Assembly (NCBI RefSeq): GCF_000142905.1
Contig: NW_013657612.1
Coordinates: 6,159 to 70,158 of the forward strand
Reading direction: 5' to 3'
Length of the DNA: 64,000 nucleotides
From: Thecamonas trahens ATCC 50062
Lineage: Eukaryota > Protista > Apusomonadida
The position numbers were made by a program, and so were the translations under genes. Below the pieces are notes generated by a model. The model had not been told where the DNA came from. It searched no databases and saw only the letters and a list, made by a program, of their open reading frames with translations. Positions 16,221-34,456 of the stretch are shown here, one piece after another (position 1 is the stretch's first letter; every line of letters starts with the position of its first letter).

Positions 16221-19200
16221 CTACGTCTCGTTGACGGTGAGAACCAGAGCGACGCCGCGAAGGATCCAGTGCCGGGCCGAGCCATCGCGAACAGGTAGGC
16301 TGACCGACATGACGTAGTTTGAAGAGAGACCGGTGGTGGAGAGCCGGCCCTTGCGGAGCGAGGTGCAGTAGACCGGGCAGTCGTAGCGGTTAGTGTGGGC
16401 CTTGGCCACCGCAGGCTTGACAACCGGCCGGAGCCAGAGCGACGGCATGCGTGAGGCGGCCTTGCCCGACTGCGACTCGGTGAGCACGTTGCCGACGTCG
16501 TCCCAGCGCGCGCCCTCGAGCCAGAGGCCGTGGACAACAACGCCCTCGTCGGGCGTGCCCATCGAGCCGTCGACGACGCGGACGTCAAACTCGAGCTCGT
16601 CGATGGCGTGCCCAGAGACCCGCACGTGGTGCTGAAGAACGCCCGAGAGGAAGCCCTGCGGAAAGGTGAACGCTGGGAGCCAGAACGAGCTCGGCGTCTT
16701 GCCCGACTCGAGCCAGTCGCGGAAGAACGCGACCCGCGCCGAAAGGTCGGCAAAGAAGCCGAAGAGCGGCAGCGTCGACGAGTACGGGCACGACTCGAGC
16801 CAGGCCTGCGGGACCCGGCCGTCGCGGAGCGCGATGAAGATGTCCTCCAGCTCGTCGTCAAACACGACCCGGCCCGAGACCGCATCCTGGACACGCACCA
16901 GCTTGGCCCGCACATCGCCCACAAACCGCGACAGTCGTGCAGCTTCCTGCGCGAGGACCACCGAGAGCGCCGGCACCCGGTTCTGTCCGGGCACCGAAAA
17001 CAGCGGCGAGTCGCGGTCGATGACAAGCTCGCTCGGAAGCCCACCCTCGAGCTCGGCCGCGATCTCCTTGACCACGTCCTGGTCCGACGGCGGCTTGGGC
17101 GAAGGGTCGGCTAGATCTTCGGCGTCATCGGCGTCGGCGTTTGGTGCCTCGGCACCCGCACCGCCCTCGGCCGGCGGCTTGGGCGAAGGGTCGTCGTCGC
17201 CGGCCACTTGTCGCGGCTGGACAGCAGCAATGTCTGCCAGCAGCCGCAACGACTCGGCGCGGGCGCGGGTGAGCACCGAGTTCTCGTGCAAGCCGACGGT
17301 CTCGGCGTCCTTGGCCGAGTCCCAGTGACTCTCCACGTGGGCCTTGACCGCCGCCAGCCGCGGCGCAGGCGACTTGGTGGAGAAGACCACCGACTCGATG
17401 AGGGTCTGCACCAGCCGCCGGTCGAGATCGTCGGTCACCCGCCCGCCAAGCACAATGTCGCCGAGGAGGTAGGTGAGTGCGTCGCGCGGGACAACGCCCG
17501 CCTCCTCGTCGAGGAACGACCGAACCACCTTGAACGCCGTCCGTAGATCAGGCGATGACCAGCCGTACGAGATGTTGAACCCAAGCGGGCCGTACTCCTT
17601 CCGCTCCAGCAGGATGGCGTAGACAGACGAGACGGCGTACGACAGGTTGCGCCAAGTCGGCGAGCCGCTGTCAAACTCTTCCTCGTCAAGCTCACCCAGC
17701 GCCGCGAGCAGGTTCGCCTTGATCCCGCGCGGCGGGTCAAACGTGATCTTGAGCGACGATTGGAGGACAGGCACAGGAAACGCGCCCGACGGCAGCGACG
17801 AGAGCCACAGCCGAAACCGCGGGTGGACCTCGATCTCACCCACCACCCCGCTGGCAAGTTCGTTGACAAGCCGCTCCAGCTCGGGCATCCACGAGCTTGC
17901 CAGATGGCAGTTCTGCAGGAACACCCACCCGCCGCTCTCGGCCGCGCGCGCAATGAGATCCTCGGCAATCGGGCCCTGACCCTTGCCTAGCGACAGGTCG
18001 TACAGCTCGTCCTCATCCCGCGCTCGGCTGCAAGCCGCATCAGCGCCGCTGATGGATCGGCGCCCGGCGTGAGGAGGAAGAGCACAGGCACCGCCGACGA
18101 CGACTCGTCCGCGACTTCCGACAGCGCAAACGCAGGCGCGCCAGCAAACTCGGCGCCGAGCGTCGACGAGACAAAGCTTGCCATGCCGCGCGCGAGCGCG
18201 TCCGGCCGGAACACGCGGAGTACAAGCAGCTTCTGGAATGCGTTGAGCGGCATACTGACAGGCACCGGCGCACGCATGGGATCCGGAGAATGCACAAACG
18301 ACTCCCACGCCGCAAGCTCGCCGGCCACTTGCTCCGAAAAGCCGGCAAAGTTCGCCACAGACTGCTCGAGCTCAGACACAAGCGCCCACATTTTGGCCGT
18401 CAGCCACGCCGGGACCAGCCCATTGGGCGCGCGCGGCATGGCAGGCAACTTGTCCATCTCGCGTGCTCCGGCCCGGAGCAGAAAGTTGAGCTCGTCGCCC
18501 CGGATTGCGCCCGCGTGCACAAGCACCTTGACCGCAATCAGCGACGAGAACAGGAGCTTGTGCTCAACAAACAGGCCACGCGAGACGTTGACAAAGACCG
18601 ATGACGTGATCGCACCCAGCAGCGCAGTGAGGCGAGTCTCCAGCGCCTGGGTCTCGCCCTCGCCACCCTCGGCGCCCTCGCCATCTGCAGGCGTCACCGT
18701 TGCCCGAATGGCAGCCAAGAACATGCGCTCCTTGAACAGCGAGAGCGCATAGTCGTACATCGACTCGACCTTGCTCAGGTCGACGAGGACAAAGAAGAGG
18801 ACGGCGCCACGGACGGCGACCGAGCGGTACTGGTCGCGGGCAAGCTCGACCTCCTTCTCGACCCGCTCCGACTCGATGACTCGCGCGGCGATCGAGGTTG
18901 CCGACGCCTTGGCCGCTTGCAGCGTGTTGACAAGGACCTCGTCCTCCAGCACGCCCTCGGCGTTGGCCAGCAGCCGCAGGATGTTGTTCTCGATATCTTC
19001 CAGCTCCGCCTTGTCGGCAGCGAGCGAGACAATAAGGTCGACTCGCTTCGCCTCCAGCTCCGGCGCCTCGAGCGAGACGACATCGCCGAGCAGCTGATCC
19101 TCAAGACCCGAGAGGGTGACCGTAAAGTTGATGAGCGCAACCTTGATGCACACTTCGGGCAGGTAGTGCGGGTTAGACAGCTTGGTCGTCATGTACAGAC

Positions 19201-22200
19201 GGAAGCCAGGATCGTAGTCAACCTCGGCATCGCCGACCTTGACAAGCACCCGCGGGCCCTGGTGGGTAAACTGCTTGAGGAGCAACGAGTCGAGCGCAGG
19301 ATCCAGTTCCTCGCCAACATCCTCAATGAGGACTGGTAGCCCTTGTCGGACCGCAGTCTCCAGAGACCGTAGCAGGTCCGGCTCGCCGAGCTTGACCACC
19401 ACCAGTCCCGACTCTTCCTCCATTGACCGCACCCACTTGTTCGCCTGGCCCTGCGGATCAATCATGAGCGGGAAGGCCCCGCTCAGTGTCGCCAGCACGG
19501 CATTCTGCGCCGAGAACTCGTCGGTCGGCAGACCCTGGAGGTTCCAGTTCCGGATCGTAACCGGCTTGGCGAGAATTGACGTTAGCGTGAGGTGCGCGTA
19601 TGACGCAGGCTCCTCGACAGTCGCCTCAACCTCGGAAGTCGCCTCGACGTCAGCGTCAGCGTCAACGCCGGCGTCAGCGTCAGCGTCAGCGTCAGCGTCG
19701 TCTCCGCCTTCGCTTCCACTCCCAGTCTTGGCACCCTCGCCTTCGGCCTCAGCATCCTGAGCCTCGGGCTCGACACCAGCCTCGACCGCGAGCCGAGGCG
19801 GCGCGCGGAGCTTGAGTCCCGACGCCCGGACAAAGCCGAGCCACTGGTCCCACAGCTTGGCGCGCCACTCTTGGGTGAACGGGCCAAAGTAGGCGAGGCC
19901 GGCTGATGCGAGAAAGACGTCACCGACGAGCGACGAGGCTTCCTCACGAACACGCTCAAGCGACTCCTCCCAACGGACGGCCTCACCGGCGAGCTCGTTG
20001 ACCAGCTTGCCGGCGCGCTCGAGCTTGACACGGGTCTCGCCCATGACGCGCTCGACCTCCTCCAGCTCGTTGAGCGTGGCTTGGTACTGGTCGCGCAGAG
20101 TGGCAAGCTCGTCCTCCACCTGGGCCAGCTTGGCCTGCTTCTCCTGCAGCTTGGCCATCATCTCGGCAAGCTTCTCCTGGGCGGCGTCACGGAGGACGCG
20201 CTTCGGCTCGACCTCGGCGTAGACCTTGACGTACTCGGAGACGGCCTTGACCCAGAGGACAAGGGTGGAGCAAGCCATGGAGCCCTTGGACTTGATGTAC
20301 TCTTCGTCAAACTCGGGGTCATTGAGATACTTTTTGAGGCGACCAAGAACAGCCGGCGGGAGGGTGGTCTTGTCGAGTTCGCGGAGCGAGCGCAGAAAGT
20401 GCGGCTCGCCGAGCAGCCGCTTGGCGTCGGGCCACGTCGGGTTGGTCGAGCCGAGAGTAATGAGGACGGCGTTCATGACCTTGATGACCGCCGGCGACGG
20501 GTTGGCGTACGACTTGACCTCGGAAATGTCGGCCGGGTTGAGCACCTCGAGCGCATCCTCGGCGGCATCCATCATGGGCTGGACCTTGGAGAGGTCGCGC
20601 TCGGCATCCTCAAAGGCCATCTTGGTCAGCAGCGTCTGCTCGTTGACCTCGACCTCTTCGGCGGCGACGCGGCGGCGGATGCCATCGGCCACCTCGGACT
20701 CCTGCGCCACCTTTTCCATGAGTGCCTGCGTGGCGGCAGCCTTCTCTTCGAGCTCGGGCTGCATCTGCTGAAGAGTGATCTGCATTTCAGCCACCAGCTC
20801 GTTGGTCTCGCGGAGCTTGGCCGTTCCGCCGGCAAACTTGGCCATGGCCGCACCGAGCTCAGCCTGCTGGCGCGCGAGCATGGCGCCGTACGTGTCGAGG
20901 AAGGCGAGGTACGATGCCGGTGTGACGTAGAAGCGGCGACCCATCTGGGCATAAAAGGCGTCTGCGGCGGCCTCGACCGAGGCGTGGACCGAGACGCAGA
21001 GCTTGGCAAGGGTGGCAGCAAGGCCCGGTGCGGCACCGACAACTGAGGCGGCCGCCGGCGTGAGGCGGTGCTGGCCGACCCGCTCGAGAGCAAAGCCGGA
21101 CCAGACGTCGACCCAGTCAATGGTGCAGCACGAGACAAGCGAGGGGAACATGAGGAGGCGGCGGCGGAACTGCTTGCCGATCGGCGACATGCAGAGGACG
21201 ACGTGAAGCTTCTCGCGGACTTGCTTGATGAAGTACTCGAAAATGCCTGCGCGGTCCTTCTCGGCAATGCGACCCTCGGAGACGGCAAAGGGCCGGACCT
21301 TGTTGATGACCGTCTCATATTCCTCGCCAACAAAGAGTGACGGGACTTCACCGGTGTTGAGCACACCGTTAATGTCCTCGAGGAAGGCCTCGTCCACAAT
21401 CTGGGTGTCGTTGAGGAGGAAGACCACGTTTTCGCGGGCAACGCCGGCGAGGGTGTACAGCTGGCGGAGATCCTCGCGAAAGTCGGAGCGTGCATACGAG
21501 CGAGTGAGCTTGATCTCAAAGACCTGGTACTCGGCCATGGCAGCTGCGAGGCGAGTGAGCGTCCGCTTGCCGGTACCAGAGACGCCGACAAGTAGAGCGT
21601 TCCCACGCGGCTGGCGGAGGATGCGCGCAATGCGCGAGACGTGGTCGATGGCGTCCTTGAAAAAGACGAGCTCGACCGAGGCCTCGCCCGAGTCCATGTT
21701 GGCGCGGTCGAGGTACTCTTCAAGCGTGCGGACAACCTTGGCCGAGCCGGCGCCGCCGGCGACGCCCTCATACACGCGCTCTTCGGGCGTGGCGCCGACG
21801 CGCATAAAGTCGCCAAACATAAGCGAGGCCACGGCGTTTGTCTCCCAGCGGAGGCCAAAGTGGCGGCGGATGAGGGCGACAACCAGGTCAAGGAAAGCAT
21901 CGCGGTCCTCGACACAAGTGAGGCGGTCGTGGAAAACGCGCATTGACTCGTGGGCCCAGAGTGAGACGAGCTCGGGTGCGTCGGCGAGATAGCCCGGCTT
22001 GGTCTGGAGCACACCCTGGACAACCTTGGACAGGTCGCGGAGGTTAAAGGTGTAGTGCGACTTGCTCGGGGTCGGCAGCATTTCTGCGCGGACCCGCGAG
22101 TAGAGCTCGACCGAGGCCTTGACAACCTTGGCAGCCGAGGCGGCGACCTCGGACGGGAACTGGCCCAGGAAGCCCGAGAGGATCGAGTGGAAGATGCGGA

Positions 22201-25200
22201 AGAGCGAGTCGACGTCTGTGGGCGGGACGTTGAGCATGAAAAAGTGCCGCTTGAAGCGCTCAGACATGGGGTTACGCCCGCCGCCGGGCGGTCCGCACGA
22301 GCCGACAAGTGTCACGTCCTCGACACGCTTCCAGAACAGCGCCGGGCGGTCGTACCACCCGCCGTAGTCGAGGTACTGGCGGAGGAGCTCGATGGCTGGC
22401 TGCGAGTCGGAGACCGGGTCGACAGCCGGCATGTTGATGTCGTCGACAAACAGGACGACGCGCTTGCCGTTCATGCCGCGGAGCACATCCTTGGCGCGGC
22501 GCTTCTCGAGCTTGTTCTCGATCATCAGCTGGGTCCGCTGCGACGAGGTCTGCGCCGAAAAGTTGATGGCGATTGTTTGCCACGAGGCGCCGATCCTGCC
22601 CATGCCCCCGTTGCCGCCCGAGGCGAGGGCAGCCGACGACGGGCCGGTCGCGAGGTTGACCATGGAGCCTCCGCCCGAGGCGAAAGAGCCCTGCTGGGCG
22701 CCGCCGGCAAGCTGGCGGAGCCAGTTCTGGACCACCACAGTCTTTCCGGTCCCGGTTGCGCCGTTGATGAGGACGTGACCGCGGAGGACTGACGAGCCCG
22801 AGGCGAGAGGGCCGGAGCCGCCCTGCGGGACAAGAGCGTTGAGGAGGAACTGCATGCACACGGTCTCGGCGGTGGGCACGAGCATCTGCCAGAACGGCAC
22901 CCCTGGGGTCCACGAGAACTCGGGGACGAGGTCGTCCCATGGGGCAAACGACTTGCGCTCCGGGTCGACAAAGTAGTGGTAGACGGTCTTGGTGCCTGGA
23001 ATGGCGGCAACGTCGGCAAAGGCCTCCTGGACAAAGGCGTCAAAGCCCTCACGCGAGCCAGCGGCGAGGTTGCCACCGAGGCCCCACACAAAGGCAAAAA
23101 CAAAGATGTCCTCGGCGAGCGAGACGGCGTCGGCAGAGTCGGCGTCGGGGTCAAAGCCGGCGTGCGGGGTGAGGAGGCCGGTGAGGAGCTTAACGACGCC
23201 AGCTACGAGCGAGGCGTCGCACGAGACAACCTCCTCGGTGCAGTATTGACGGATGTAGTCGAGACCAGGAGGAACGTGGGCAGCAAAGAGCTCGGCAAGG
23301 CGGTCCTTGACCTCCAGAGGAATGTGGGAGGTGGCCTGCGAGCGGAGCCAGGCGCGGACCGGCGGCTCCCAGCCGAGGTCAACAGGCTCAAGGTAGACCA
23401 TACCGCAGCGCGAGACGGTGGCGGGCGAGGCCTTGGCAAGGTTGAGGACCTCGAAGAGAAGGCGGATGGACGGGGTGAGGTTGATGCGAGCCGAGTTGGG
23501 CAAGCACAGGAGCTTGTTGTCGTCGAGCACGGTGTTCATGTTCTCGATCCACTTGGAGTCGACAGGCCCGTCGAAGACGACCCATTGCAGCTTGGGAGGA
23601 CTCGACTTGCCGCCCTGCGGGCTGTCGCTCGGTCCCGGAGCCGAGGCCTTGACGGCAGCTGAGACCATGTTGCCGATGAGGCCCGGGGTGTACTCGCGCG
23701 AGGTCAGGTCGACATGGCCGTAGAGCTCGTCCATGGTCACGGCCTTGGGGTTGAGCACGTACTTGGTGACACCGGTGTAGAGCGGCGAGGCTGACGAGGC
23801 GGGACGGGAGGCGAGATCATCAAGCGCGTCTGCGAGGACGTTGACGGCGACAGACTTGCCGCCGCCGGACTTGCCGACGACCATGACGCCGTGACGGACG
23901 CAGAGGGTCTCCCACAGCTGGCGGACCTTGACAATTTGCTTGTCGACGATCTCGAGGCCGCGGGCGAGGGCGGCCGACTCGACGGCAGAGACGAGGTCAC
24001 CAAAGTCCTCGTCGGGGAGCTCGAGGCCCGGGAACAGGTCTGCGAGGATGCCCTGGAAGAGCGGAAGGTCCTCGGCAAGGAACTTGGGCACGTTAGAGTC
24101 GCGGAGGGCGCGGATGAGGACAACGTCCTCGTCGAGCTGCGGGTTGCTCCGCTTGAGGGTACCGGCCATGACGAGGACGGATTTGATGGCGCGCATGCCA
24201 AAGTCGTAGTGGTCCTGCTGGGAGAGCTGCTCGGAGCAGAGGCGATAGAGCTGGGTCATCTTGCGGGAGAGGACGGTGGCCGACTCAAAGCCCTCTGCGT
24301 AGAGCACGATTTCGGCAATCATGGCGTAGTCCGGGATCATCATGGCGACTGGGCGGAAAAGGGCGGCGAGGTTATCGGGCAGCTCTGTCCGGCCGGTGTA
24401 CGACGGGTTCATGGTGATAAAGTAGGCGCAGCGATCGTTGAGCGAGATACGGCGGCCCTCAAATTCAAAGAGGCCGTCGGGCGAGGGCGCGACGCGGGCG
24501 CGCTGGATGGTGAGAATCTGGGTGGCGATGACGGAGAGGACCTCGACCTCAATGCGGTTAAACTCGTCAAAGCAACACCATGCGCCGGACTGGGCAAGGC
24601 CGGCAAAGTAGCGGCCCATCATGGCGACCTCGAGCGACTCTGAGCAGTTGAAGACAACACACTGGATGGCCAGCGCCTTGGCGAGGTCCTTGACGGTCTC
24701 GGTCTTGCCTGTGCCTGCCGGGCCTGCCGGCGAGCCACCCATGTTGAGCGCCATGGCGCCGGTGAGAGTGAGGTAGCAGCGGTCGGTGAGCGGTGTGATG
24801 ACGAGTCGCGGCGAGCAGCCGAGGTACTCGTAGCCGTACTCAAAGCGGGCGTTGGTTTGCTCCATGAACAGCTCCTCGGCCTCCGAGTCCCAGTAGTAGC
24901 GAAGCTGCTTCTTCCAGAGGAAGGCCGAGTCATCGGCGACCTTTGCCGCCCAGAGCGAGGAGACGATGTCGCGCGAGTGGACTTCGATGGTGAGGAGCGA
25001 GCCGAGAGCCTTGCGCTGGAGCTTGGTCAGCTCGCCCTGGACGAGGAGGGCGAGCGCGGAGAGCTGCTTGAACGACTTTTCCTTGAGCCGGTTGAGGGCG
25101 TTGCGGGTGTTGTCTGCACGGAGCGAGGCCTCGACCTCGCGAGCCCAGAGGACTTGCGAGATGGCGAGAACGAGCTGTGCACAATGGTCAAAGATCCACT

Positions 25201-28200
25201 GCTCGCGCGGCTTTGCGGCGGCAAGGTAGTCGGTGAGCGCGTCACGGCCGCGCTTCTTGAGCGACGAGCGCATGGCCTCCTCGACTTTTGAGAGCCACGA
25301 CTCGACGGCCTCGGAGCGGGTCTTGACGGAGCGGGTGAGGACAAGGCGCTCGCCCTCTGACGAGACGAGGGCGACAATGTCCATGGAGGAGCGGCCAGAG
25401 GGCTCGGGAGCGGAGAACTCGAGGGCAGCAACGTTGGAGAAGCACTTAAGGAGGTGCGGCTGGACAGCGGCTGGGTTCTTGGACTCTGCGAGAATTTCGA
25501 GGAGCTCGTCGTTGGACAGGAAATAGAAGCGCGGGAAGAAGGAGCGCTTGCCCTCGAGCTTGGACTCGAGCGAGGCTTGGACCTGCTCGAGAATGCGATT
25601 GTTTGCGCGGAGCTGCTCGAGCATGCCAGGCTCGAGGACGGCGTCGAGGCATCGCGGGCCGTCCTGGACGCGGCGCATGATGGCGTTCCACGAGCGGTGG
25701 ACTTCGCGAAACATCTTCTCCTCTTCGTACAGCTGCTTGACGATTTCCGAGTTGGAGAAAATGGTCTCAAAGTACATCCACTGGGCCTGGCAGACGAGCC
25801 AGGCTTCGAGCGTCTCCTTGAACAGGCGGAGGTTGCGGTCCCAGGCCTCGGCCTCGGGCTTGATGGGCCCGACGTAGCGCGAGCCGAGGACGGTAGAGAC
25901 AAGGATGAGCGAGTCCTCGAGGGCCTGAGCAATTTCCTCTGTGGAGCCGAGGATGTACATGTCGCGCGAGTCGCGGTAGCGGAGAACGATGAACTCTTCG
26001 TTGGCCCATGTGGACTGGACCTTCTCGAGCATCTCGGTGAGGTTGGCCTCGTTTGTGGCCTCGAGTGAGACTTGCTGGATACGGTCGGCAGCCTCGAGGA
26101 CGTCAAGCATGAGGAGCGAGCCGAGAGTAAAGTCGTCGCCGCGGGCAATGATGCGGGCCGAGCCGAGCTTCTCCTGGATGTCCTCCCAGTGGCGGAGCTG
26201 GAGCGCCGAGTTGCGGAGGTTGACGATGATGGGGACAAAGATCTGGAAGTCGTCGACGAGGTCGCGGAGCTTGGGCACCACCGGGTTCGGTGGGAGGCCG
26301 CGCTCGAGTTTCATGCAGACCTTGACAAAGTGTTGCACCTTTGACGCGAGGGCGGCGGCGTCGATCGAGTCGAACGGGGTCGAGCGCCATGTCTCTTGCA
26401 GCCCCTCCCACTCTGCAAACGAGGACCAGAGCATCTCCTTGAGAGCCAGGTCAGACATGGTCTCTTCGAGCTCCTCAAACTTGGAGACCGGGACCTTGAA
26501 AGTCTTCTGGAAGCGAATGTACTTGGATGCCTGCTCCTTGAGGGCCTTGATGCGTGCAGTGAGAGTGGAGACGTAGTCGATCATTTCGGCGACGCCCGAG
26601 GCGTCTGAGAGGACGCGCTCGTGCTGGGCGAGGTGCTTGACGTCGAGGATGAGGTTGCGCAGCTCGGCGATCTTCTTCTCGAGCTGGGTGGCAAAGACCT
26701 GGATGTTCTTCTCGCGCTCCTCCTCGGCAAAGGCGATTTTGGCCTTGAGGGACTGGACGAGCGGGGCAAGGGTGCGGAAAGAGGCATACTCTTCGAGGTT
26801 GTGGATCTCTGGGCGGTAGCCGACAATGACACCATACATGGCCTTGACGAGGTCCTCCTCGTCCTCGAGCTCGTCCTGCTCGACGGTGAGGGTCTCGAGG
26901 TAGGCAAGCTTCTCGACAAAGTGCTCGACCTTGGTGGGGACGGCGTCGAGGCGGGCGTGCGCGGCGTTGAGGCGGGTGAGGAGAGCCGAGTTGCGGTCCG
27001 AGGCGAGGCGCGGGAGAAGATCCTCCAGCACAGCGAGGCACTTGGCCGGCGAGGGCGCAAACGAAGCCTTGAGCGCGGACGAGTCGATCTGGATGATGCC
27101 GACGGAGGAGGAGACCGGCATGAGACCCATGAGCGACATCTGGGCGCGGTAGCGGGTCATGGAGGCAGCGAACCACTGGAGCGGCGGGCCACGGGCCTCG
27201 ACGAGCGAAATGTCCATGAGCTCTGCCGAGCGGTGGATGGTCCAGAACGGCTCAAAGACGGCGAGGTAGTCCGAGGCGGCGATGAACGACTTTGCGAGCG
27301 AGTCCTTGACGTGTGCGAGCAGGCGCTGGTACTTGGAGTCGCCCTCAAGGACTTCAAGGAGGACGGGCCCGTCACCAACTTCAGAGACGTCAAACTGCTC
27401 CGAGAGGGTGGGCGTGACGTAGCGGGCAAGGAACTCCTTGTTCTTGATCAGCTTGTGCTTTTCCATGTTGGAAAGAATGACGAGCTGGAAGTTGCGGATG
27501 ATAGAGTCGATGGCGTCGTGGAAGGTACCGCGATCAGGGGCAAAGGCCAGCTCCGAGTACTTGAGCTCGAGGGCGATGCGGAAGAGCGGCGGACGCGGAG
27601 CGGCGGTGGCCTGGGTCACCATGGACGAGGCAGCAGCCGTGAGGTCACTGGCAGCGGCGGTGGCGGCGGCAGCGTCGAGGAGCGACGAGCGCTCGTCAAA
27701 GGCACCGTTGATCTCCTGCGGATCGAGCGACGAGCCAGGCTCGACACCGGTACCACCGGCGACAGACGAGACAAGCTTGGCCATAGAGGCGATGCGAGCA
27801 CGGACGGCAGCCTGAGCACCGTCGTCGGGCATGACGGCCTGCAGCAGGTCCCACACGGTGTTGACCGCGAGCTGGTGGAGGGTGTCGATGATGAGGTAGT
27901 CGGCGAGCTTGATAAAGTTGGCCAGACGACGGCATTCGGTGCGCTTGGCAGCAAGGAACGTGTAAGACAGCGGGGCGACCGAGTCAGAGAGCGATGCGCG
28001 GCCGAGCGAGTCGCCGGGCGCCGGCCCGTCCGACGTCGACGAAGCTCCGAGGCGGGCGTCGAGCGAGGAGGCCTGGCCAGCAGAGGCATGCTGGGCACGG
28101 CCACCGGAGCGGCGCGACTGTTCCTCGTCAAATCCGGCACGCGAGAGCGCATACTCGCAGGCCTCGGCGACGGTGGCCTCGACGGCGGCGTTGAAGGTGG

Positions 28201-29458
28201 CCAGGCGTTCGAGGAGGTACTCGCGGTGTTCGTCCTGGAGCACGACAAACATCTCGAGAGTGAGGGTGGTGCCGGGCGCCATTCGGTGGAGGCGCTCCTG
28301 GGAGAGCTCATAGCAGAGCGAGCGGAGCTTGCGGAGCGCGTGGCCGAGGATGTCGTTGGCGATAAAGAGGTGCTGCGAGAGAATGGAGCGGCAGAGCGCC
28401 GACTTTTTGGACCAGACGTTGCCGCGCCACATGGTGTAGCTCTTCCACATGCGGTACTTGTCAAAGATGGGGATGCGCTTGATGCGCGAGTAGAGGAGGT
28501 ACTCGCGGAGCCACTGGACAAGAGGGACAAACTCGGCGACGCCCTCGACAAAGTGGGTCACGCCCGACGACGAGAGTGTAAAGTAGTCACTCGAGTCGAT
28601 GCCTGCGTGCGAGACAATGGCAACCTTGTACGGGTTGAACTCGGGCGAGCCCTTGCGGACCGGCTTGAGGTAGACAAACTCGAGCGAGTCGGGGTTCTTG
28701 AGCAAGTGCTCCACAAACCATAGCGGGTCCGACTTGTCCGCGTGCGGGAGTTCGTCACGGAGCTTGCGGAGGAGGAGCCCGGTCTCGGTTTGCTCCAGCA
28801 CAACGTCCGCGAGCGACTTGGCGCCACCCTCATCGCCTGCGGCACTCTCTCCAACACCCGTACCACCAGCAGCAGTTACAAGAGAGCGCTGCTGCGGCGG
28901 CGATGACGAGAGCGCCGTAGCCTTTGTGGGATCGGGTGCAAATGAGACCTTTGACCGCCGCGAGGGGATGAGCCCGACCGAGCCACCCGCCAACGACGAA
29001 GTCCGCTGACCGGAGCGATACGCCTCGACCCGCTCTGCGCGGAGAATAGGCAGTGTGGAGGCCGGCGGCTTGACGGCAACATTGTTGGCGGCAGCATCGG
29101 TTGCAGTCTTGACCGCAGTGTTGACGGCAGCGTTGGCGTTGGCGGTGGCGGTGGCGGTGGCAGTGGCGCCCTCGCGACGGGAGAGCTTCCGTGTTTCGTA
29201 AGCCGGCGGGCGAGGAGCGAGGGCCTGGGTCACCCGAGCCGAGGAGAGCAGAGGCGGGAGCGTAGCCGGGCGACGCGAGGTGGAGGAAGAGCTAGACACA
29301 GCAGGGATTGCAGGTGTGGCGGTGGTGGTGTTGGTAGAGGTGGTGGTGGGGCGGACATAGAGGCGCGAGGTCAGGAGTGCAGGGTCGATGGTCCGGACCT
29401 TGAGGCCTCTGCGCGACCGGTGGAGGCCTGTGGTACGGGGCGCACCACGTTGGTCCAT
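16221..29458 (-). CDS. DNAH6: Axonemal inner-arm dynein heavy chain, DNAH6-like (~4400 aa; one -1 break at ~18015)
   Basis: P-loops GPAGTGKT, GKSGGGKS, GATGTGKT, GVSGTGKR; FPRFYFLSNDELL, LAQSGAWCCFDEFNRI, YDFGMRA; stalk/MTBD; IDPQGQA; after the break LSLGKGQG, WVFLQNCHL, C-terminal HWILRGVAL. The N-terminal FVYL..NPY..YFTLS..GVTH..QW block is typical of the DNAH6/14 group. Likely ATG at 29458 (MDQRG). Confidence 0.9.
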
Positions 29459-29843
29459 ATGTGTGAGGGTGTGGGCGTTGTGGGGATGGGTGGGCGGAAG
29501 GGGTGTGGGGTGTGGGGGGTTGTGAGGGGTGGGAGAGGTGGTGTGTGGGGAGTGCTGTGTGGGAGGAGAGGGGGGAGGGGGGGGGGGGGGGGGGGAGTGC
29601 GAGGAGGCGGAGACAGCGGGTGTTTCAACGGCGCGCGGGAAGGAGAGTGGGGGGGTGGGTGGGGGGTGAGGGACAAAAATATTTTTAGGTTGAGACACGA
29701 CGCGGGAGGTGGGAGGGTGACCTTCCAATGCCAATGCAAAGGTCTGTCTTTGGCTCGCTGCAGCGGCCACCACGGCTGCAGCGGCTGCCACGGCTGTACG
29801 GCAAGACACCGCACGTGACTGAGGAGACGGACGGGTGTAAGGG

Positions 29844-30404
29844 ATGTCTGCGTCTGCACTGAGCAAGTTCGGGTGGGTGGAGAAGCGGGGCAAGGTGCGC
29901 AAGGCATGGAAGCGGCGGTGGTGCATGTTCCGGTCGGACGGGGCGCTGGTGTACTTCAAGACGAGCCAGGATGTGGCTGCGCCAGCATGGGCATCAGCAC
30001 GTGGAGCTATTGGTCTGACTGGAGCGAGTGTGAGTGCGGTGGAGGCGGACAAGGATGGCAAGCATGGTCTGGCTATTGCTGTCTCTTCATCAAAGCGCAT
30101 CTATGCTATTCGATGCTCATCCATGCCCGAGAGGGACTCGTGGCTAGCCGCCATCCAAGGCGCCATCGAGCTCGCTTCGGGGGCTGCCGATGGCGATGAC
30201 GCCGACGGAAGGGATCTAGCTCCGGATGCAGAGTCTCGATTGTACTCGCCGGTGGTTTTCGACTCGTCCGGCGTCCATCATCCCTCGCTCCCTGACGAGG
30301 CCTTTGATCCGCACGGAGCGCAGAAAGAGGCGGCAGCACGCGGGCGCGGCGACGATCCCGTGCTTGCCGACGACACCTGGGACGCCATCCTCGACATGGC
30401 GTAG
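29844..30404 (+). CDS. Small PH-domain protein
   Basis: KFGWVEKRGKVRKAWKRRWCMF..LVYFK..GAIGL..RIYAI..ERDSWLAAIQ is a canonical PH fold with a basic phosphoinositide-binding signature. Confidence 0.92.
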   Translation: MSASALSKFGWVEKRGKVRKAWKRRWCMFRSDGALVYFKTSQDVAAPAWASARGAIGLTGASVSAVEADKDGKHGLAIAVSSSKRIYAIRCSSMPERDSWLAAIQGAIELASGAADGDDADGRDLAPDAESRLYSPVVFDSSGVHHPSLPDEAFDPHGAQKEAAARGRGDDPVLADDTWDAILDMA

Positions 30405-30433: not shown

Positions 30434-33400
30434 TTAGTTCGGGTGCGCCGCGGGGTCGGTGTTGCCGTCAGCGCCGCCGGCAAGGAAGCCCTCGAGGTGG
30501 CGCGAGTACGCCGGGTAACCCTGGCCGGCACTGCCGTTGTCGTGGCTCGGGCCCTCGCGGTTCTCGGCCGGCGACTGCGCAGCGGCAGCCTGGTCGTAAG
30601 CGGCGAGGAGCGAGAAGACGTCCTCGATAGCGACGCCAGCCGCGTTTGCGGCGTCGTTGTCGGGCGCCGGGGCCTGGGTCTGAGTCTGAGCAGAGGGCTG
30701 AGCCGGCGGGCTGGTCTGCCGCTGCTGGTGAGCGACGGCGGTGGCCTGTGCCTGGAGCTGGGTGCGGGTCGCCTCCTCGTCGGCGAGCTGGTCGGTGAGC
30801 GAGAGGGTGATGAGGTGGGTGAAGAGCATGTCCTTGAGATCCTTGAGCACATCCTCCTCAAAGACGGCAATGTCCATACCAGAGTACCGCGCGAGGATGT
30901 CCGAGAACGCGGCAAACTCGTTGGTGTCGACGGGCCGGTTGAGCTTGGTGTACTTGAACTCGGCAAAGAGGCCCTCGAGGATCTGGCGGACGACGTCGTT
31001 AAACTTGCCGCCCGACTCGGGCATGGCCGCCAGCGCCTTGAACAGATTGCCAAACTCGGTGAGGAGCGCGTCGTTGATGTAGACGTCGACGTGGTAGTTG
31101 GTGAGGATGTGGTTCATCGTGGCCTCCATCGACGAGGTTGTCGACTCGTCGTCGCCGTCGCCGTCGCCGTCGCCACCGTCGTTGTCGCCCTCGGCGGGAG
31201 TCTGAGCTTCCTGCTCGACAGCTTCGTCCGCGGCCTCCTCGCCCGCAAACTCGCCGAGGTCCAGCCCAAGGGCGGCCGGGTCGATCCCGGCCGAGCGCGC
31301 CATGTCGACGATGGCCTGCTGCTGGGCAAGGAGGTCTGCGCGGCGGGCCTCGAGGGCGGCCTTGCGCGACTGGTGGTACTCGAGCTCGGCGCGGGCGGCG
31401 GCAAGCTCGTCCTCCATGGCGCGGGCCTGCGAGGTCGACGCCGTCGCCGAGTCGGCAGCCGAGAGCTCACCGGTGGCGTCGGGGCGCTGGGTCGGCGGCT
31501 CGGGCGTGATCGAGACGTGACGCTCTGCACGGGTCGCCTCGTAAAACCGGGCGTCTTCGGGCGACTCGCCCTCGTCCTCGGATGCGAGCGAAGGCTCGTC
31601 GTCGTTGACCGACTCGGCGTAGTCGTAGGCTGCAGCGGCGGGAGCAGCGGCGGCGGCGACGGGAGCAGCGGCGACGGGCCGCGAGGTCACCACCGCGCGT
31701 GGCGTGGTCGGCGAGTCGACAGCAAACTTGTTCGGCGAGTCCTGGACCGACTGAATAAAGTAGTTGATCTGGTCGAGGGCATGCATCTCCTCCATGATCT
31801 TGTTGCGAATGACAGTGGTGGTCGGGTCGTCGTCGACGGTGGCGGTGCCGCCGGCAGCCAGCGGAGCGTCAAAGGTGACGGTCCGCGGCGGACGCTCCTT
31901 CTTGGCCGGCGGCGGGGCCTTCTTGAGCTTGCGGGCTCGCTTGCGTGCGGTGCGGGTCTCGGCGGACCGCTCGCGGAGCTCATCATCGTCGGTCGGGTGC
32001 CGCTTGGCGCCGACCTTGGGCGCGTGCTCGTCGAGGTACGCGGCCTCGGCGGTGACATCGTGCAGGAGGCGGTCGAGCGAGGCGAGGACTCGGACCCGAA
32101 GGAGCGGCGTGTCAAACTGCGCGAGCAGGGTAAAGAGCTGCGAGACGTAGCTCGGGTCGTCTTCGACGCGGACAATAAACTGCACGGCAGCCTCGTAGAC
32201 GGCCGAGTCGAGGCCGACTGAGGCCACCGACGACGCGCCATCGTCGCCATCGTCATGGCCGCCACTGTAGCTTCCGGCGCGCGCGAGCTCGGCGTTGAGC
32301 GTTGCGAGCAGGTCGGCAGTTCCGGCAGGGTGTGCCGAGTCGAGCGAGAGCACGTCTGGGGCCGCGGCGCCGGAGGGAACGCCGCTGGCGCGGGCGTCGG
32401 ACCCATGCCCGGCCTCTGACTCGGACTCTTGCGAGTCGCTAAAGTAGCGGACAAAGTCCTTAAAGAACGCCTTTTGCTCGGCGCGCGACGAGAGCGACTT
32501 GGCGTACGAGACGGCAAGCTGCAGGTCCTGCAACTTGATGTTCGAGGCATACAGCTCGTCCTCAAGGAAGCGGGTTGAAAGCGAGTCGGCCTCGGAGACC
32601 GAACCGTCTTCGCCGGCAGCGTACGCGCCAAACACGTTGTCGCCCGACACGGCGGCAATGTCGTCGCGAGTTGCGCCGAGCATGTCGTACAGGCCGCCGA
32701 TGCGGGCCTGGAGCGCCTCCATCTCGGCAGCCTGGGCCTCAAAGGCCGGGCCCGGCACCGGCGCGTGCGCCTGCTGAGCGGAGCGCGACGGCGAGTGCGA
32801 TGCAGCGCGTGCGGGGCGCGGGGCTTCGGCCGGCGACGAGGCCGACGCCGACGCGGCAAACGAGGCCGAGAGCGCCTGCGGGGGCGTGGCCTTGCGTTGC
32901 TGCGTGTACTGAGACTGGAGCTGCGACCACTGGGCGGCGAGCTGGTCGAGGATGTTGACCGAGTTGCCGCCAGCGCTCGACTCGCGCTGGACGGTGGCAA
33001 GCAGGTTGTAGATGCCGTCTTCGTCAAGCTCTTCACGCGAGGCCTCGCGGCGCGGCGCAGGGGCCGCCGCCGCCGTCACTGGCGCGGTGCTCGCCTTGGC
33101 CGGCGACGCCTGCTGGTTCACCAGCTGCTCCTGCAGCCAGCGGAGGTTGAGCAAGTGGGCTTTGCGGAGCTCGGCGAGGTCTTCGACTGGCATGTTGGCG
33201 GCGTCCTCGGCCGTGAGTGGCTGCGAGGAGCTGCGGGCGAGCGGCGGGGCCTGCGACGAGGCGCGCGGCTTGGCCGGCGAGAAGATGTCGCGGCGGACGG
33301 CGGCGGACGGCGGCGGGGCCGAGGCCTGGCGCGGAGCCTTGGCCGGCGACGGTGAGGCCTGGCGCTGCTCGGCGGCGGCGGTTGCAGCGCGAAGCTCCTG

Positions 33401-34456
33401 CTGCGCGGCAATCTGCATGTCGCGCATGGCCTCGAGCTGCTGCTTCTCGGCCATCAGCGCCATGTACTGCTCATACAGCGCGTTGGCATCCTCGGGCTCG
33501 GCGTCGTCGTCGAACTCGGCGTCGTCGCCCTGCGCCTGCACCTGCGACTGCAGGGCGGCGAGGTAGGCAGCACCGGCATCGGCACCAGCGGATGCCCCAG
33601 CCTCGGCCTCAGCCTCGACCTCGGCTGCCGCCTCGATCGACGGCACAAGCGTCTCCAGGTAGTTGGCGACGAGTGAAATGGTCTGCTCGTCCTTGTTCGA
33701 CTCGAGCAGCGACTGGAGCTGAGTAAGGTTGTTGCGGTGCTCTTGGAGCTGAGCCAGCTGGCTCTCCAGCGCATCCAACTCGCTTCGCTGCATCGACGAC
33801 TGCTCGCCAAGCGCAGACATATGCGCCACCATAGCCTCGAGGCCCTCGAGGTCATCGGCTGTCGTGCCTGTGGCGCACCGCAGCAGGATCGAGCGAGACG
33901 CAGTGAGAGAGGCGAGAGAGCGAGAGAGCGAGATAGCGAGAGAGCGAGAGTGTGAGAGAGCACACGCGCGGAAAGTTGCATGGTGGTAGCAGTGGTGGTG
34001 GTGGTGGTGGCGGTGGTGGTGGTGGTGGTGGTGGTGGTGGCCGAGTGCGACATTTTTCGAAAGACGGGCGAAGGGCACAAGGCGACATGGCGGGAGGAGG
34101 GGAGGGGTTAGTTGGTGGAGGGGCGTGGGGGGGGGGGTAATGGGGGGAATGAATGGAGGGGGGAAGGGGATGAGGATGTGGGTATGGGGATGGAGAAGAA
34201 CATTCGCACCTTGGAGTACGGCAGAGGGCGTGTTGTAAGCGCTACCAGGGCCAGTACGTCCGGCTGACCGTGGCGGGCTGTGTCGGCCTTGCGGGGTGTG
34301 GTACGAGGTCATTGGGGTAGATTCCAAGGTCATGCTGTGCGTACCTCCGGCGGCTGGACGACTCGCCTGCTGCCGACCAGGCGCAGATCCAGGTGGCGTT
34401 GCCACCATCTGAGAGATGCGCGGCGCTTGCGGCGTAAAGAACGTCCCCTGGCTCAT
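30434..34456 (-). CDS. PCM1: PCM1-like coiled-coil protein with PCM1 C-terminal domain; intron 33868-34209; 5' end uncertain
   Basis: Several coiled coils plus two blocks that match the PCM1_C pattern as I recall it: VYEAAVQFIVRVEDDPSYVSQLFTLLAQFDTPLLRVRVLASLDRLL and ILARYSGMDIAVFEEDVLKDLKDMLFTHLITLSLTDQL. Confidence 0.68.
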   Translation of the reverse strand: MSQGTFFTPQAPRISQMVATPPGSAPGRQQASRPAAGGTHSMTLESTPMTSYHTPQGRHSPPRSAGRTGPGSAYNTPSAVLQGANVLLHPHTHILIPFPPPFIPPITPPPTPLHQLTPPLLPPCRLVPFARLSKNVALGHHHHHHHHHRHHHHHHCYHHATFRACALSHSRSLAISLSRSLASLTASRSILLRCATGTTADDLEGLEAMVAHMSALGEQSSMQRSELDALESQLAQLQEHRNNLTQLQSLLESNKDEQTISLVANYLETLVPSIEAAAEVEAEAEAGASAGADAGAAYLAALQSQVQAQGDDAEFDDDAEPEDANALYEQYMALMAEKQQLEAMRDMQIAAQQELRAATAAAEQRQASPSPAKAPRQASAPPPSAAVRRDIFSPAKPRASSQAPPLARSSSQPLTAEDAANMPVEDLAELRKAHLLNLRWLQEQLVNQQASPAKASTAPVTAAAAPAPRREASREELDEDGIYNLLATVQRESSAGGNSVNILDQLAAQWSQLQSQYTQQRKATPPQALSASFAASASASSPAEAPRPARAASHSPSRSAQQAHAPVPGPAFEAQAAEMEALQARIGGLYDMLGATRDDIAAVSGDNVFGAYAAGEDGSVSEADSLSTRFLEDELYASNIKLQDLQLAVSYAKSLSSRAEQKAFFKDFVRYFSDSQESESEAGHGSDARASGVPSGAAAPDVLSLDSAHPAGTADLLATLNAELARAGSYSGGHDDGDDGASSVASVGLDSAVYEAAVQFIVRVEDDPSYVSQLFTLLAQFDTPLLRVRVLASLDRLLHDVTAEAAYLDEHAPKVGAKRHPTDDDELRERSAETRTARKRARKLKKAPPPAKKERPPRTVTFDAPLAAGGTATVDDDPTTTVIRNKIMEEMHALDQINYFIQSVQDSPNKFAVDSPTTPRAVVTSRPVAAAPVAAAAAPAAAAYDYAESVNDDEPSLASEDEGESPEDARFYEATRAERHVSITPEPPTQRPDATGELSAADSATASTSQARAMEDELAAARAELEYHQSRKAALEARRADLLAQQQAIVDMARSAGIDPAALGLDLGEFAGEEAADEAVEQEAQTPAEGDNDGGDGDGDGDDESTTSSMEATMNHILTNYHVDVYINDALLTEFGNLFKALAAMPESGGKFNDVVRQILEGLFAEFKYTKLNRPVDTNEFAAFSDILARYSGMDIAVFEEDVLKDLKDMLFTHLITLSLTDQLADEEATRTQLQAQATAVAHQQRQTSPPAQPSAQTQTQAPAPDNDAANAAGVAIEDVFSLLAAYDQAAAAQSPAENREGPSHDNGSAGQGYPAYSRHLEGFLAGGADGNTDPAAHPN
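33868..34209 (-). other. Predicted in-frame, stop-free intron (342 nt, GTGCGA...CACAG) containing (CAC)n and (CT)n repeats
   Basis: GT donor after CAAG and a CAG acceptor; the interior is microsatellite/low-complexity with non-coding composition; splicing keeps the frame (LQG|TTADD). Confidence 0.75.

What the first reader, a model, noticed from the sequence alone, without database searches (positions are those of the whole stretch)
30780..32220. Candidate PCM1 (centriolar satellite scaffold) in a non-animal flagellate
Seen: a ~1200-aa acidic multi-coiled-coil protein with two C-terminal helical blocks. From memory of human PCM1, block 1 (VYEAAVQFIVRVEDDPSYVSQLFTLLAQFDTPLLRVRVLASL) parallels IYSEVATLISQNESRPHFLIELFHELQLLNTDYLRQRALYAL, and block 2 (LARYSGMDIAVFEEDVLKDLKDMLFTHL) parallels LAKFAGRKLKDCGEDLLVEISEVLFNEL, in the same order. 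Known: PCM1 and centriolar satellites are usually described as animal/holozoan features. Inference: if the host is an apusomonad-type protist, the satellite scaffold predates opisthokonts, and satellite-like granules may service its flagellar apparatus.
Basis: partly seen in the sequence, partly recalled or inferred. Interest (0 to 1): 0.8.

Follow-up and report, generated by a model that had tools for sequence, protein, structure and literature searches.

The report
Divergent PCM1 homologue in an apusomonad
The gene is very probably a highly diverged relative of PCM1, the scaffold of the granules that surround animal centrioles, found here in Thecamonas, a flagellate just outside the animal-fungal group, which would move the origin of this scaffold back by one branch of the eukaryote tree.

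Summary
A minus-strand gene (window 30434-34456) is 100% identical to the uncharacterized AMSG_11024 of Thecamonas trahens. It encodes an acidic (pI 4.5), helical, low-complexity protein of about 1,200 aa that contains both quoted blocks.

Neither the protein nor any trimmed piece matches Pfam PCM1_C, even at E<=10.

Homology is nevertheless supported through intermediates.
- A profile search of 1.84 billion proteins found only four hits: the protein itself, a marine-metagenome orthologue, P0003 (E 9e-8) and P0004 (E 2e-5).
- P0003 matches PCM1_C positions 7-44 at block 1 (26.9 bits; cut-off 27.4). It also shares an identical 17-residue stretch with the published Monosiga brevicollis PCM1 orthologue, so I take it to be a choanoflagellate PCM1.
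- P0004's gene has a block-2 exon that matches PCM1_C positions 276-318 (E 3e-4).
- Searched back against the Thecamonas genome, both find only this gene.
It also shows a third motif (YDY-A/S-E) in the same order.

Block 2 on its own is weakly supported (hhalign P 3e-4).

PCM1 is already known across opisthokonts, including chytrids, so this is a one-node extension and not a leap from animals. Granule formation is inferred, not shown.

The parts
30434..34456 (-). Whole gene: ATG at 34456, stop at 30434-30436. It equals AMSG_11024 of Thecamonas trahens ATCC 50062.
   Evidence: ORF list and translation; 100% identity to P0001.
33868..34344 (-). In-frame, stop-free GT..AG intron of 477 nt, with CAC/His-coding and CT-rich repeats. 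An alternative in-frame donor lies at 34209.
   Evidence: The P0001 alignment lacks ORF residues 38-196; splice sites read.
33635..33850 (-). N-terminal conserved helical, heptad-like segment (P0001 residues about 44-115). It is the candidate self-association coiled coil.
   Evidence: Strongly conserved with the marine orthologue P0005 (compared); crude heptad scan.
32639..32740 (-). Conserved helix 'EAQAAEMEALQ'.
   Evidence: Invariant between Thecamonas and P0002; weak look-alike in L005 at 8903-8950.
32441..32572 (-). 'LED' motif (LEDELYASNIKLQDL...FFKDFVRYF). This is the best-conserved element and lies upstream of the Pfam PCM1_C model.
   Evidence: P0004 hits it at E 1.9e-5 library-wide and E 5.2e-8 genome-wide, as the only hit. 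hhalign gives P 1.7e-11. By eye, it is also present in the M. brevicollis PCM1 orthologue.
32057..32224 (-). Block 1, which corresponds to PCM1_C positions about 7-44.
   Evidence: It aligns to P0003 residues 375-420. That stretch of P0003/L006 matches PCM1_C positions 7-44 at 26.4-26.9 bits.
31613..31627 (-). YDYAE motif, followed by an acidic/Ser-rich run.
   Evidence: Invariant in P0002 and present in an L004/L006 exon. Also present between blocks 1 and 2 in published animal PCM1s.
31265..31456 (-). Long conserved helix (coiled-coil candidate) ending in the conserved 'IVDMAR.AGIDPAALG'.
   Evidence: Invariant run shared with P0002; AlphaFold helix with pLDDT 85-90.
30785..31144 (-). Block-2 helical domain. 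Its core (30809-30907) corresponds to PCM1_C positions about 276-318.
   Evidence: hhalign against the L005/L006 block-2 exons gives P 3.4e-4 and aligns block 2 to block 2. The top alignment of both exons falls here. The L005 exon matches PCM1_C positions 276-318 at E 2.8e-4. AlphaFold pLDDT is 74-90.
30437..30784 (-). Low-complexity Q/A/P-rich C-terminal tail with one short conserved 'ED...LL' patch. No counterpart of the C-terminal half of PCM1_C was detected.
   Evidence: Alignment with P0002; pLDDT below 50; no Pfam match.

Best explanation
The gene encodes the Thecamonas member of the PCM1 family. It appears single-copy, and I read it as the orthologue. It is so diverged that the Pfam PCM1_C model no longer detects it.

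Anatomy, in order:
- an N-terminal conserved coiled coil;
- long acidic and Ala/Ser/Pro/Gln-rich disordered linkers;
- a C-terminal series of helical elements in a fixed order: LED motif, block 1, YDYAE, a long helix, and the block-2 domain.

Block 1, YDYAE and block 2 occur in the same order in recognised PCM1 proteins.

By analogy with PCM1, the coiled coils would multimerise the protein into non-membranous cytoplasmic granules. The C-terminal helical modules would bind and concentrate basal-body and flagellar client proteins. These could include their nascent chains, if the translation-site model of satellites is right.

What is shown: homology of the LED motif plus block 1. What is probable: homology of block 2. 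What is inferred: multimerisation, granule formation and client binding.
For: **Forward search.** A profile of the Thecamonas C-terminal half plus its marine orthologue was run against 1.84e9 representative proteins. It returned only four proteins at E<=1e-3: the two query sequences, P0003 (E 9.4e-8) and P0004 (E 1.9e-5).

**P0003 is a PCM1.** P0003/L006 matches Pfam PCM1_C positions 7-44 exactly at block 1 (E 2.6e-6 to 3.5e-6; 26.4-26.9 bits against a cut-off of 27.4). It also contains the 17-mer FLPGRISPRSGSVSMAP. That 17-mer is identical in the published M. brevicollis PCM1 orthologue JGI33155 (PMC4046923 Dataset S1). PMC12094185 lists the same gene as the PCM1 orthologue.

**P0004's gene carries block 2.** Further downstream on L005, this gene has an exon that I first picked out by its similarity to Thecamonas block 2. 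That exon then matched PCM1_C positions 276-318 (E 2.8e-4).

**Profile-profile comparison.** The apusomonad profile against L006 (LED plus block 1) gives P 1.4e-11 (97% probability). Against the L005 LED exon it gives P 1.7e-11. The best alignment of both block-2 exons falls on Thecamonas block 2. A focused block-2 comparison gives P 3.4e-4.

**Reciprocal search.** P0003 (LED plus block 1) and P0004 were each searched against the whole 28.7-Mb Thecamonas genome in six frames. They hit only this gene (E 7.9e-5 and 1.6e-4, with the next hit at 0.65; and E 5.2e-8).

**By eye, against published PCM1s.** Block 1, a YDY[A/S/M]E motif and the block-2 signature L-x-[KR]-[FYH]-x-G...L[FY] occur in the same order in animals, in M. 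brevicollis and in chytrids.
Against: - There is no direct Pfam PCM1_C match at E<=10 for the whole protein, for halves or for tightly trimmed blocks. The same is true of the marine orthologue. A six-frame search of the genome with PF15717 also found nothing.
- No named PCM1 reached E<=1e-3 in the large search.
- Neither intermediate reaches Pfam's gathering score.
- Block 2 is weak. The L005+L006 block-2 profile does not recover this locus genome-wide and scores only 1.9 bits in the window.
- The C-terminal half of PCM1_C (positions about 320-628) has no detectable counterpart.
- The comparison with published PCM1 sequences was by eye only.
- The partner inventory is mixed. A FOP_dimer gene is present, but no clear ADIP/SSX2IP, MIB_HERC2 or CCDC66 match was found.
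- Nothing tests localisation or function.
Confidence: 0.8

Rival explanations
1. The protein is homologous to PCM1 only in its C-terminal helical modules and has a different cellular role. It might, for example, be a fixed structural component of the apusomonad flagellar root or basal-body apparatus, or a general condensate or mRNA-granule scaffold, with no satellite-like granules.
For: - Only about 300 of roughly 1,200 residues are demonstrably related to PCM1.
- The N-terminal coiled-coil region shows no detectable similarity to anything outside apusomonad-like sequences.
- The C-terminal half of PCM1_C is missing.
- Several typical satellite partners were not found.
- Even in Drosophila, PCM1 (Combover) foci are not concentrated near centrosomes (PMC12094185).
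Against: - The overall build matches PCM1: N-terminal coiled coils, acidic disordered linkers and C-terminal conserved helices.
- The gene is single-copy.
- In opisthokonts, retention of PCM1 tracks retention of centrioles and cilia (PMC12094185), and Thecamonas is flagellated.
Confidence: 0.15
2. It is a lineage-specific acidic coiled-coil protein with no evolutionary relation to PCM1. On this reading, the resemblances are chance matches between amphipathic helices.
For: - There is no direct Pfam match.
- Both intermediates are below Pfam's gathering score.
- Block 2 is not significant in HMM searches.
- Helical, low-complexity proteins produce many spurious weak hits.
Against: - The hits to P0003 and P0004 have library-wide E-values of 9e-8 and 2e-5, and nothing else reached 1e-3 among 1.84e9 proteins.
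- hhalign gives P about 1e-11.
- The reciprocal hits are unique.
- P0003 is tied to a published PCM1 orthologue by an identical 17-mer.
- Three to five motifs occur in the same order in all lineages.
Confidence: 0.05

Closest known systems
PCM1 (pericentriolar material 1; Pfam PF15717 PCM1_C), including Drosophila Combover and the choanoflagellate and chytrid orthologues reported by Kuhn et al. 2014 and Pachinger et al. 2025
   Same: - It is an acidic, largely helical and disordered scaffold-type protein with N-terminal coiled coils.
- Block 1 corresponds to PCM1_C positions 7-44.
- A YDY[A/S]E motif is followed by an acidic/Ser-rich run.
- A helix follows, then a block-2 domain that corresponds to PCM1_C positions about 276-318. 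Block 2 carries the signature L-x-[KR]-[FYH]-x-G...L[FY].
- All of these occur in the same order as in PCM1.
- The gene is single-copy and sits in a flagellated organism.
   Different: - It is about 1,200 aa long, against about 2,000 aa in vertebrates.
- It is too diverged for the Pfam model.
- No counterpart was found of the C-terminal half of PCM1_C, or of the LIR-containing tail of vertebrates.
- The spacing between blocks 1 and 2 is about 400 aa, filled with low-complexity sequence.
- The host lies outside Opisthokonta, where no PCM1 has been reported in the literature I could search.
Metagenomic orthologue P0002/P0005 (Tara Oceans marine metagenome, locus L001)
   Same: It is 48-55% identical over the whole conserved part. 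All elements are conserved: the N-terminal coiled coil, the EAQAAEMEALQ helix, the LED motif, block 1, YDYAE, the long helix and block 2.
   Different: Its low-complexity linkers are shorter. Its organism is unknown; I presume a marine apusomonad-like flagellate. Like the Thecamonas protein, it has no Pfam match.
P0003 (L004/L006; presumed choanoflagellate PCM1) and the compact gene on L005 (an unidentified AT-rich eukaryote)
   Same: The LED motif, block 1, YDYAE (in L006) and block 2 occur in the same order.
   Different: They are close enough to animal PCM1 for sub-threshold Pfam PCM1_C matches. Their block 2 carries 'ILYDEMIFN', where Thecamonas has 'MLFTHLITL'.

Membership tests
PCM1 (Pfam PF15717, PCM1_C) | A direct match to the PCM1_C profile at or above the gathering score of 27.4 bits | tested here: not met
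   No PCM1_C hit at E<=10 for the whole ORF, the C-terminal half, 100-150-aa pieces or 55-61-aa trimmed blocks. The same holds for the marine orthologue. The six-frame genome search with PF15717 was empty.
PCM1 (Pfam PF15717, PCM1_C) | Significant sequence similarity to an accepted PCM1 orthologue over the start of the C-terminal conserved region (block 1, PCM1_C positions 7-44) | tested here: met
   The apusomonad profile hits P0003 at E 9.4e-8 among 1.84e9 proteins, and hhalign gives P 1.4e-11. P0003/L006 block 1 scores 26.4-26.9 bits against PCM1_C positions 7-44. P0003 shares an identical 17-mer with the published M. brevicollis PCM1 orthologue. The link is transitive, not direct.
PCM1 (Pfam PF15717, PCM1_C) | The second conserved helical block (PCM1_C positions about 276-318; human LAKFAGRKLKDCGEDLL...LFNEL) | tested here: inconclusive
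   The focused hhalign comparison gives P 3.4e-4 at 38% probability. The top alignment of both intermediate exons lands on block 2 (P 0.015 and 0.026). HMM searches fail. The L005 exon matches PCM1_C positions 276-318 at E 2.8e-4. By eye, the L-x-[KR]-[FYH]-x-G signature is shared with the human, Hydra and B. dendrobatidis sequences.
PCM1 (Pfam PF15717, PCM1_C) | Conserved elements in the same order: block 1, then YDY[A/S]E plus an acidic run, then a helix, then block 2 | tested here: met
   The order in L005/L006 comes. The order in published PCM1s was read from PMC4046923 Dataset S1. The comparison with the published sequences is by eye.
PCM1 (Pfam PF15717, PCM1_C) | Reciprocal best hit (orthology criterion used by Pachinger et al. 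2025) | tested here: met
   Forward: the only hits outside the apusomonad-like pair are P0003 and P0004. Backward: both hit only this gene in the Thecamonas genome. This was done with intermediates, not with human PCM1, which was not available by reference.
PCM1 (Pfam PF15717, PCM1_C) | The C-terminal half of PCM1_C (positions about 320-628) and the vertebrate LIR-containing tail | tested here: inconclusive
   Only about 125 low-complexity residues follow block 2. They have no Pfam match and pLDDT below 50. One short 'ED...LL' patch is conserved with P0002. The aromatic residue in Thecamonas 'FSLL' is not conserved in P0002.
PCM1 (Pfam PF15717, PCM1_C) | N-terminal coiled coils that mediate self-association | tested here: inconclusive
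   Heptad-like segments lie at P0001 residues 45-98 and 414-447 by a crude scan. They are conserved with P0005. No sequence similarity to the PCM1 N-terminus was detected.
Centriolar satellite scaffold (functional class) | Forms non-membranous granules that contain centrosomal or ciliary proteins near centrioles or basal bodies | not testable with these tools
   Needs localisation and interaction experiments in Thecamonas.

The most novel reading that the evidence does not exclude
The PCM1-type satellite scaffold predates Opisthokonta. It would have been present at least in the common ancestor of apusomonads and opisthokonts (Obazoa). Its core would be a conserved series of elements: LED motif, block 1, YDYAE, a helix and block 2. 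In Thecamonas it would still build cytoplasmic granules that service the flagellar apparatus. The newly defined LED motif, which lies upstream of the Pfam model, would then be a handle for finding PCM1 in still more distant flagellates.
Probability: 0.45. Interest if true: 0.65.

Novelty: new member of a known kind. Interest (0 to 1): 0.5.

Why it matters
PCM1 was long treated as a vertebrate invention. [quoted passage not shown] A PCM1 homologue in an apusomonad would place its origin before the opisthokont ancestor.

The finding also gives:
- a free-living, genome-sequenced flagellate in which the ancestral role of satellites (transport, proteostasis or local translation) could be examined without an animal-type centrosome;
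- conserved motifs outside the Pfam model that should improve detection of this fast-evolving family.

The step is incremental, by one node of the tree. It rests on remote homology established through intermediates.

Tried and rejected
- **Direct Pfam scans.** The whole protein, halves and trimmed blocks gave no PCM1_C hit. PF15717 against the genome found nothing, and its control genomes are prokaryotes, so that blank is uninformative.
- **Word-indexed protein searches (three).** I used the Thecamonas C-terminal region, P0003, and a four-row alignment. They found only the protein itself and P0002.
- **ESM Atlas.** Two searches gave no usable hit.
- **PDB.** The sequence and profile searches returned only His-tag or noise hits. 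Foldseek with the AlphaFold model found nothing at E<=2, and no PCM1 structure turned up in these searches.
- **Metagenome scan.** It returned only a longer contig of the P0003 organism.
- **Identifying the organisms of L005 and L001 through neighbouring genes.** The clusters carry no names.
- **Partner inventory.** ADIP gave only coiled-coil noise. MIB_HERC2 and CCDC66 gave no match. FOP_dimer is present. I judge this too insensitive to weigh.
- **MAFFT with short exons in a long alignment.** It misaligned them, so the blocks were handled separately.
- **A conserved LIR in the tail.** I rejected this, because the aromatic position is not conserved in P0002.
Full report
**What is there**

The window is GC-rich eukaryotic DNA. 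On the minus strand a stop-free frame runs from the ATG at 34456 to the stop at 30434-30436. A word-indexed protein search identified it as the uncharacterized protein AMSG_11024 of Thecamonas trahens ATCC 50062 (P0001, 1,181 aa, 100% identity). Thecamonas is an apusomonad. From established phylogeny, apusomonads are the sister group of Opisthokonta.

The NCBI model removes an in-frame, stop-free GT..AG intron at 33868-34344. An alternative in-frame donor lies at 34209.

Both quoted blocks are present, at ORF residues 753 and 1188. The protein is acidic, with pI 4.46. It is rich in Ala, Ser, Pro and Gln.

**The direct test fails**

Pfam hmmscan at E<=10 reports no PCM1_C (PF15717) match for any of the following:
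- the whole ORF;
- the C-terminal 641 residues;
- 100-150-residue pieces;
- 55-61-residue pieces cut tightly around each block.

The same is true of the marine orthologue. A six-frame search of the genome with PF15717 was empty too.

**Relatives**

The word search found one orthologue, P0002/P0005. It comes from a Tara Oceans marine metagenome and is 48-55% identical. Aligning it with Thecamonas defines the conserved elements in order:
1. an N-terminal coiled coil;
2. an 'EAQAAEMEALQ' helix;
3. a very well conserved element that I call the LED motif (LEDELYASNIKLQDL...FFKDFV.YF);
4. block 1;
5. YDYAE;
6. a long helix ending in IVDMAR.AGIDPAALG;
7. a roughly 120-residue helical domain that contains block 2.

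A profile of this alignment was scored by HMMER against 1.84 billion representative proteins. Only four proteins reached E<=1e-3:
- the two query sequences;
- P0003, a 462-aa product from a JGI metagenome (E 9.4e-8, covering the LED motif plus block 1);
- P0004, a 52-aa exon product from a Logan contig (E 1.9e-5, covering the LED motif).

No named PCM1 was reached.

**The two hits are PCM1-like genes**

P0003 matches Pfam PCM1_C positions 7-44 exactly at its block 1. The score is 26.4 bits at E 3.5e-6 against a cut-off of 27.4. The longer contig L006 scores 26.9 bits.

On P0004's contig (L005), a tblastn search with the apusomonad proteins pointed to a downstream exon that resembles block 2. 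When that exon was then scanned, it matched PCM1_C positions 276-318 at E 2.8e-4 and 20.2 bits.

L006 is the same organism as P0003 and was found by the metagenome scan. It also carries a YDYAE exon and a block-2 exon that is nearly identical in its core to that of L005.

The spliced genes on L004/L006 and L005 were searched exon by exon, by reference.

**Strength of the links to Thecamonas**

Profile-profile comparison (hhalign) of the full-length apusomonad alignment against single exons gave the following:

| Target | P-value | Probability | Region of P0001 aligned |
|---|---|---|---|
| L006, LED plus block 1 | 1.4e-11 | 97% | not stated |
| L005, LED exon | 1.7e-11 | not stated | not stated |
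| L005, block-2 exon | 0.015 | not stated | 1016-1057 |
| L006, block-2 exon | 0.026 | not stated | 1024-1065 |

For both block-2 exons this was the best-scoring alignment anywhere along the 1,181 columns, and it falls on Thecamonas block 2. A focused comparison of the block-2 domains gave P 3.4e-4 at 38% probability.

Plain HMM searches with the L005+L006 block-2 profile did not recover the locus. So the LED motif and block 1 are securely homologous, while block 2 is probable and rests partly on position and order.

In the reverse direction, P0003 (LED plus block 1) and P0004 were searched against the whole 28.7-Mb genome in six frames. They hit only this gene. P0003 gave E 7.9e-5 and 1.6e-4, with the next hit at 0.65. 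P0004 gave E 5.2e-8 as the sole hit.

**Anchoring to accepted PCM1 proteins**

Kuhn et al. 2014 (PMC4046923) deposited a PCM1 alignment that could be read here. It shows the following:
- Animal PCM1s carry a YDY[A/S/M/I]E motif between blocks 1 and 2, for example in Hydra, Capitella, amphioxus and sea urchin. This matches the Thecamonas YDYAE in both position and the acidic/Ser context that follows.
- The Monosiga brevicollis orthologue (JGI33155) is the gene that Pachinger et al. 2025 also list as the PCM1 orthologue. It contains FLPGRISPRSGSVSMAP, a 17-mer that is identical in P0003. I therefore take P0003 to be a choanoflagellate PCM1. The same Monosiga protein has a recognisable second half of the LED motif (...FASML....ADFFAMFF.RF) and block 1.
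- The chytrid orthologues have block 1 (for example ..IYR.AA..IS.H...PYFLL..F). B. dendrobatidis also has a block 2 with the same L-x-[KR]-[FYH]-x-G...L[FY] signature as the human protein, L005, L006, P0002 and Thecamonas.

No computed alignment or profile comparison with them was made, and the comparison is by eye. That step is listed as the decisive computation.

**Structure**

An AlphaFold model of ORF residues 620-1340 was built from a four-row alignment. Its mean pLDDT is 53, and it consists of helix plus disorder. The confident parts are:
- the LED helices;
- the long helix at ORF residues 1001-1055 (pLDDT 85-90);
- the block-2 domain at ORF residues 1105-1248 (pLDDT 74-90).

Foldseek against the PDB found nothing. 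The PDB sequence and profile searches found no PCM1 chain.

**Mechanism**

What is shown is a single-copy gene whose C-terminal helical elements are homologous to those of PCM1 and occur in the same order.

What is inferred from knowledge of PCM1:
- the N-terminal coiled coils multimerise the protein;
- the long acidic disordered linkers favour condensate-like granules;
- the C-terminal modules dock clients.

In animals these granules concentrate centrosomal and ciliary proteins. They have recently been proposed as sites of translation of those proteins (PMC12094185). Whether Thecamonas forms such granules is untested.

A quick partner check was mixed and insensitive. A FOP_dimer gene is present, but there was no clear ADIP, MIB_HERC2 or CCDC66 match.

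**What is known, and novelty**

[quoted passage not shown] Pachinger et al. found orthologues across opisthokonts, including choanoflagellates and ciliated fungi, and they searched only opisthokonts. Thecamonas is in neither data set. Full-text searches for PCM1 together with Thecamonas or apusomonads found nothing relevant.

This is therefore a new, very divergent member of a known family, in the sister lineage of opisthokonts. It is a one-node extension and not a jump from animals to protists.

**Verdict**

- Homology to PCM1: about 0.8.
- Conservation of the satellite-scaffold function: about 0.45.
- Interest: 0.5.

Noticed in passing
window 17987-30100 (-): The gene immediately downstream on the same strand is a 4,037-aa dynein heavy chain (DHC_N2, AAA_6/7/8/9 and the MT stalk, with E down to 1e-151). 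The adjacency to a PCM1-like gene is probably a coincidence.
   Followed up: partly
window 33868-34344 (-): The in-frame, stop-free intron contains (CAC)n, which would read as poly-His, and CT-rich repeats. A second in-frame donor lies at 34209, so either splice form, or intron retention, would keep the reading frame.
   Followed up: partly
L004 18-1406 and L006 (JGI metagenomes 3300007520 and Ga0105053): P0003 shares the identical 17-mer FLPGRISPRSGSVSMAP with the published Monosiga brevicollis PCM1 orthologue, although the flanks differ. This may be a conserved Ser/Pro-rich regulatory (phosphorylation?) motif of choanoflagellate PCM1. The apusomonad proteins have a loosely similar conserved 'DIFSP..R.SS' stretch.
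   Followed up: no
L005 8300-12300 (+) (Logan SRR10663366, 37% GC): A compact, intron-rich PCM1-like gene in an unidentified AT-rich eukaryote. It has the LED exon, a block-1-like exon and a block-2 exon within about 1.2 kb. Its block 2 ('ILYDEMIFN') is nearly identical to that of the presumed choanoflagellate. Neighbouring genes include a Ras-family GTPase.
   Followed up: partly
L001 (ENA ERZ908037, Tara Oceans), gene 774-3005: A marine metagenome contig (63% GC) encodes the only close orthologue (P0002; the longer form P0005 is 993 aa). This indicates an uncultured apusomonad-like flagellate with the same gene. A PH-domain gene lies downstream.
   Followed up: partly
G000:C15:91495-91674 (+): A FOP_dimer (FOP/FOPNL-type) domain above the Pfam cut-off (30.9 bits) is present in the Thecamonas genome. 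FOPNL is a satellite and distal-centriole protein in animals.
   Followed up: no
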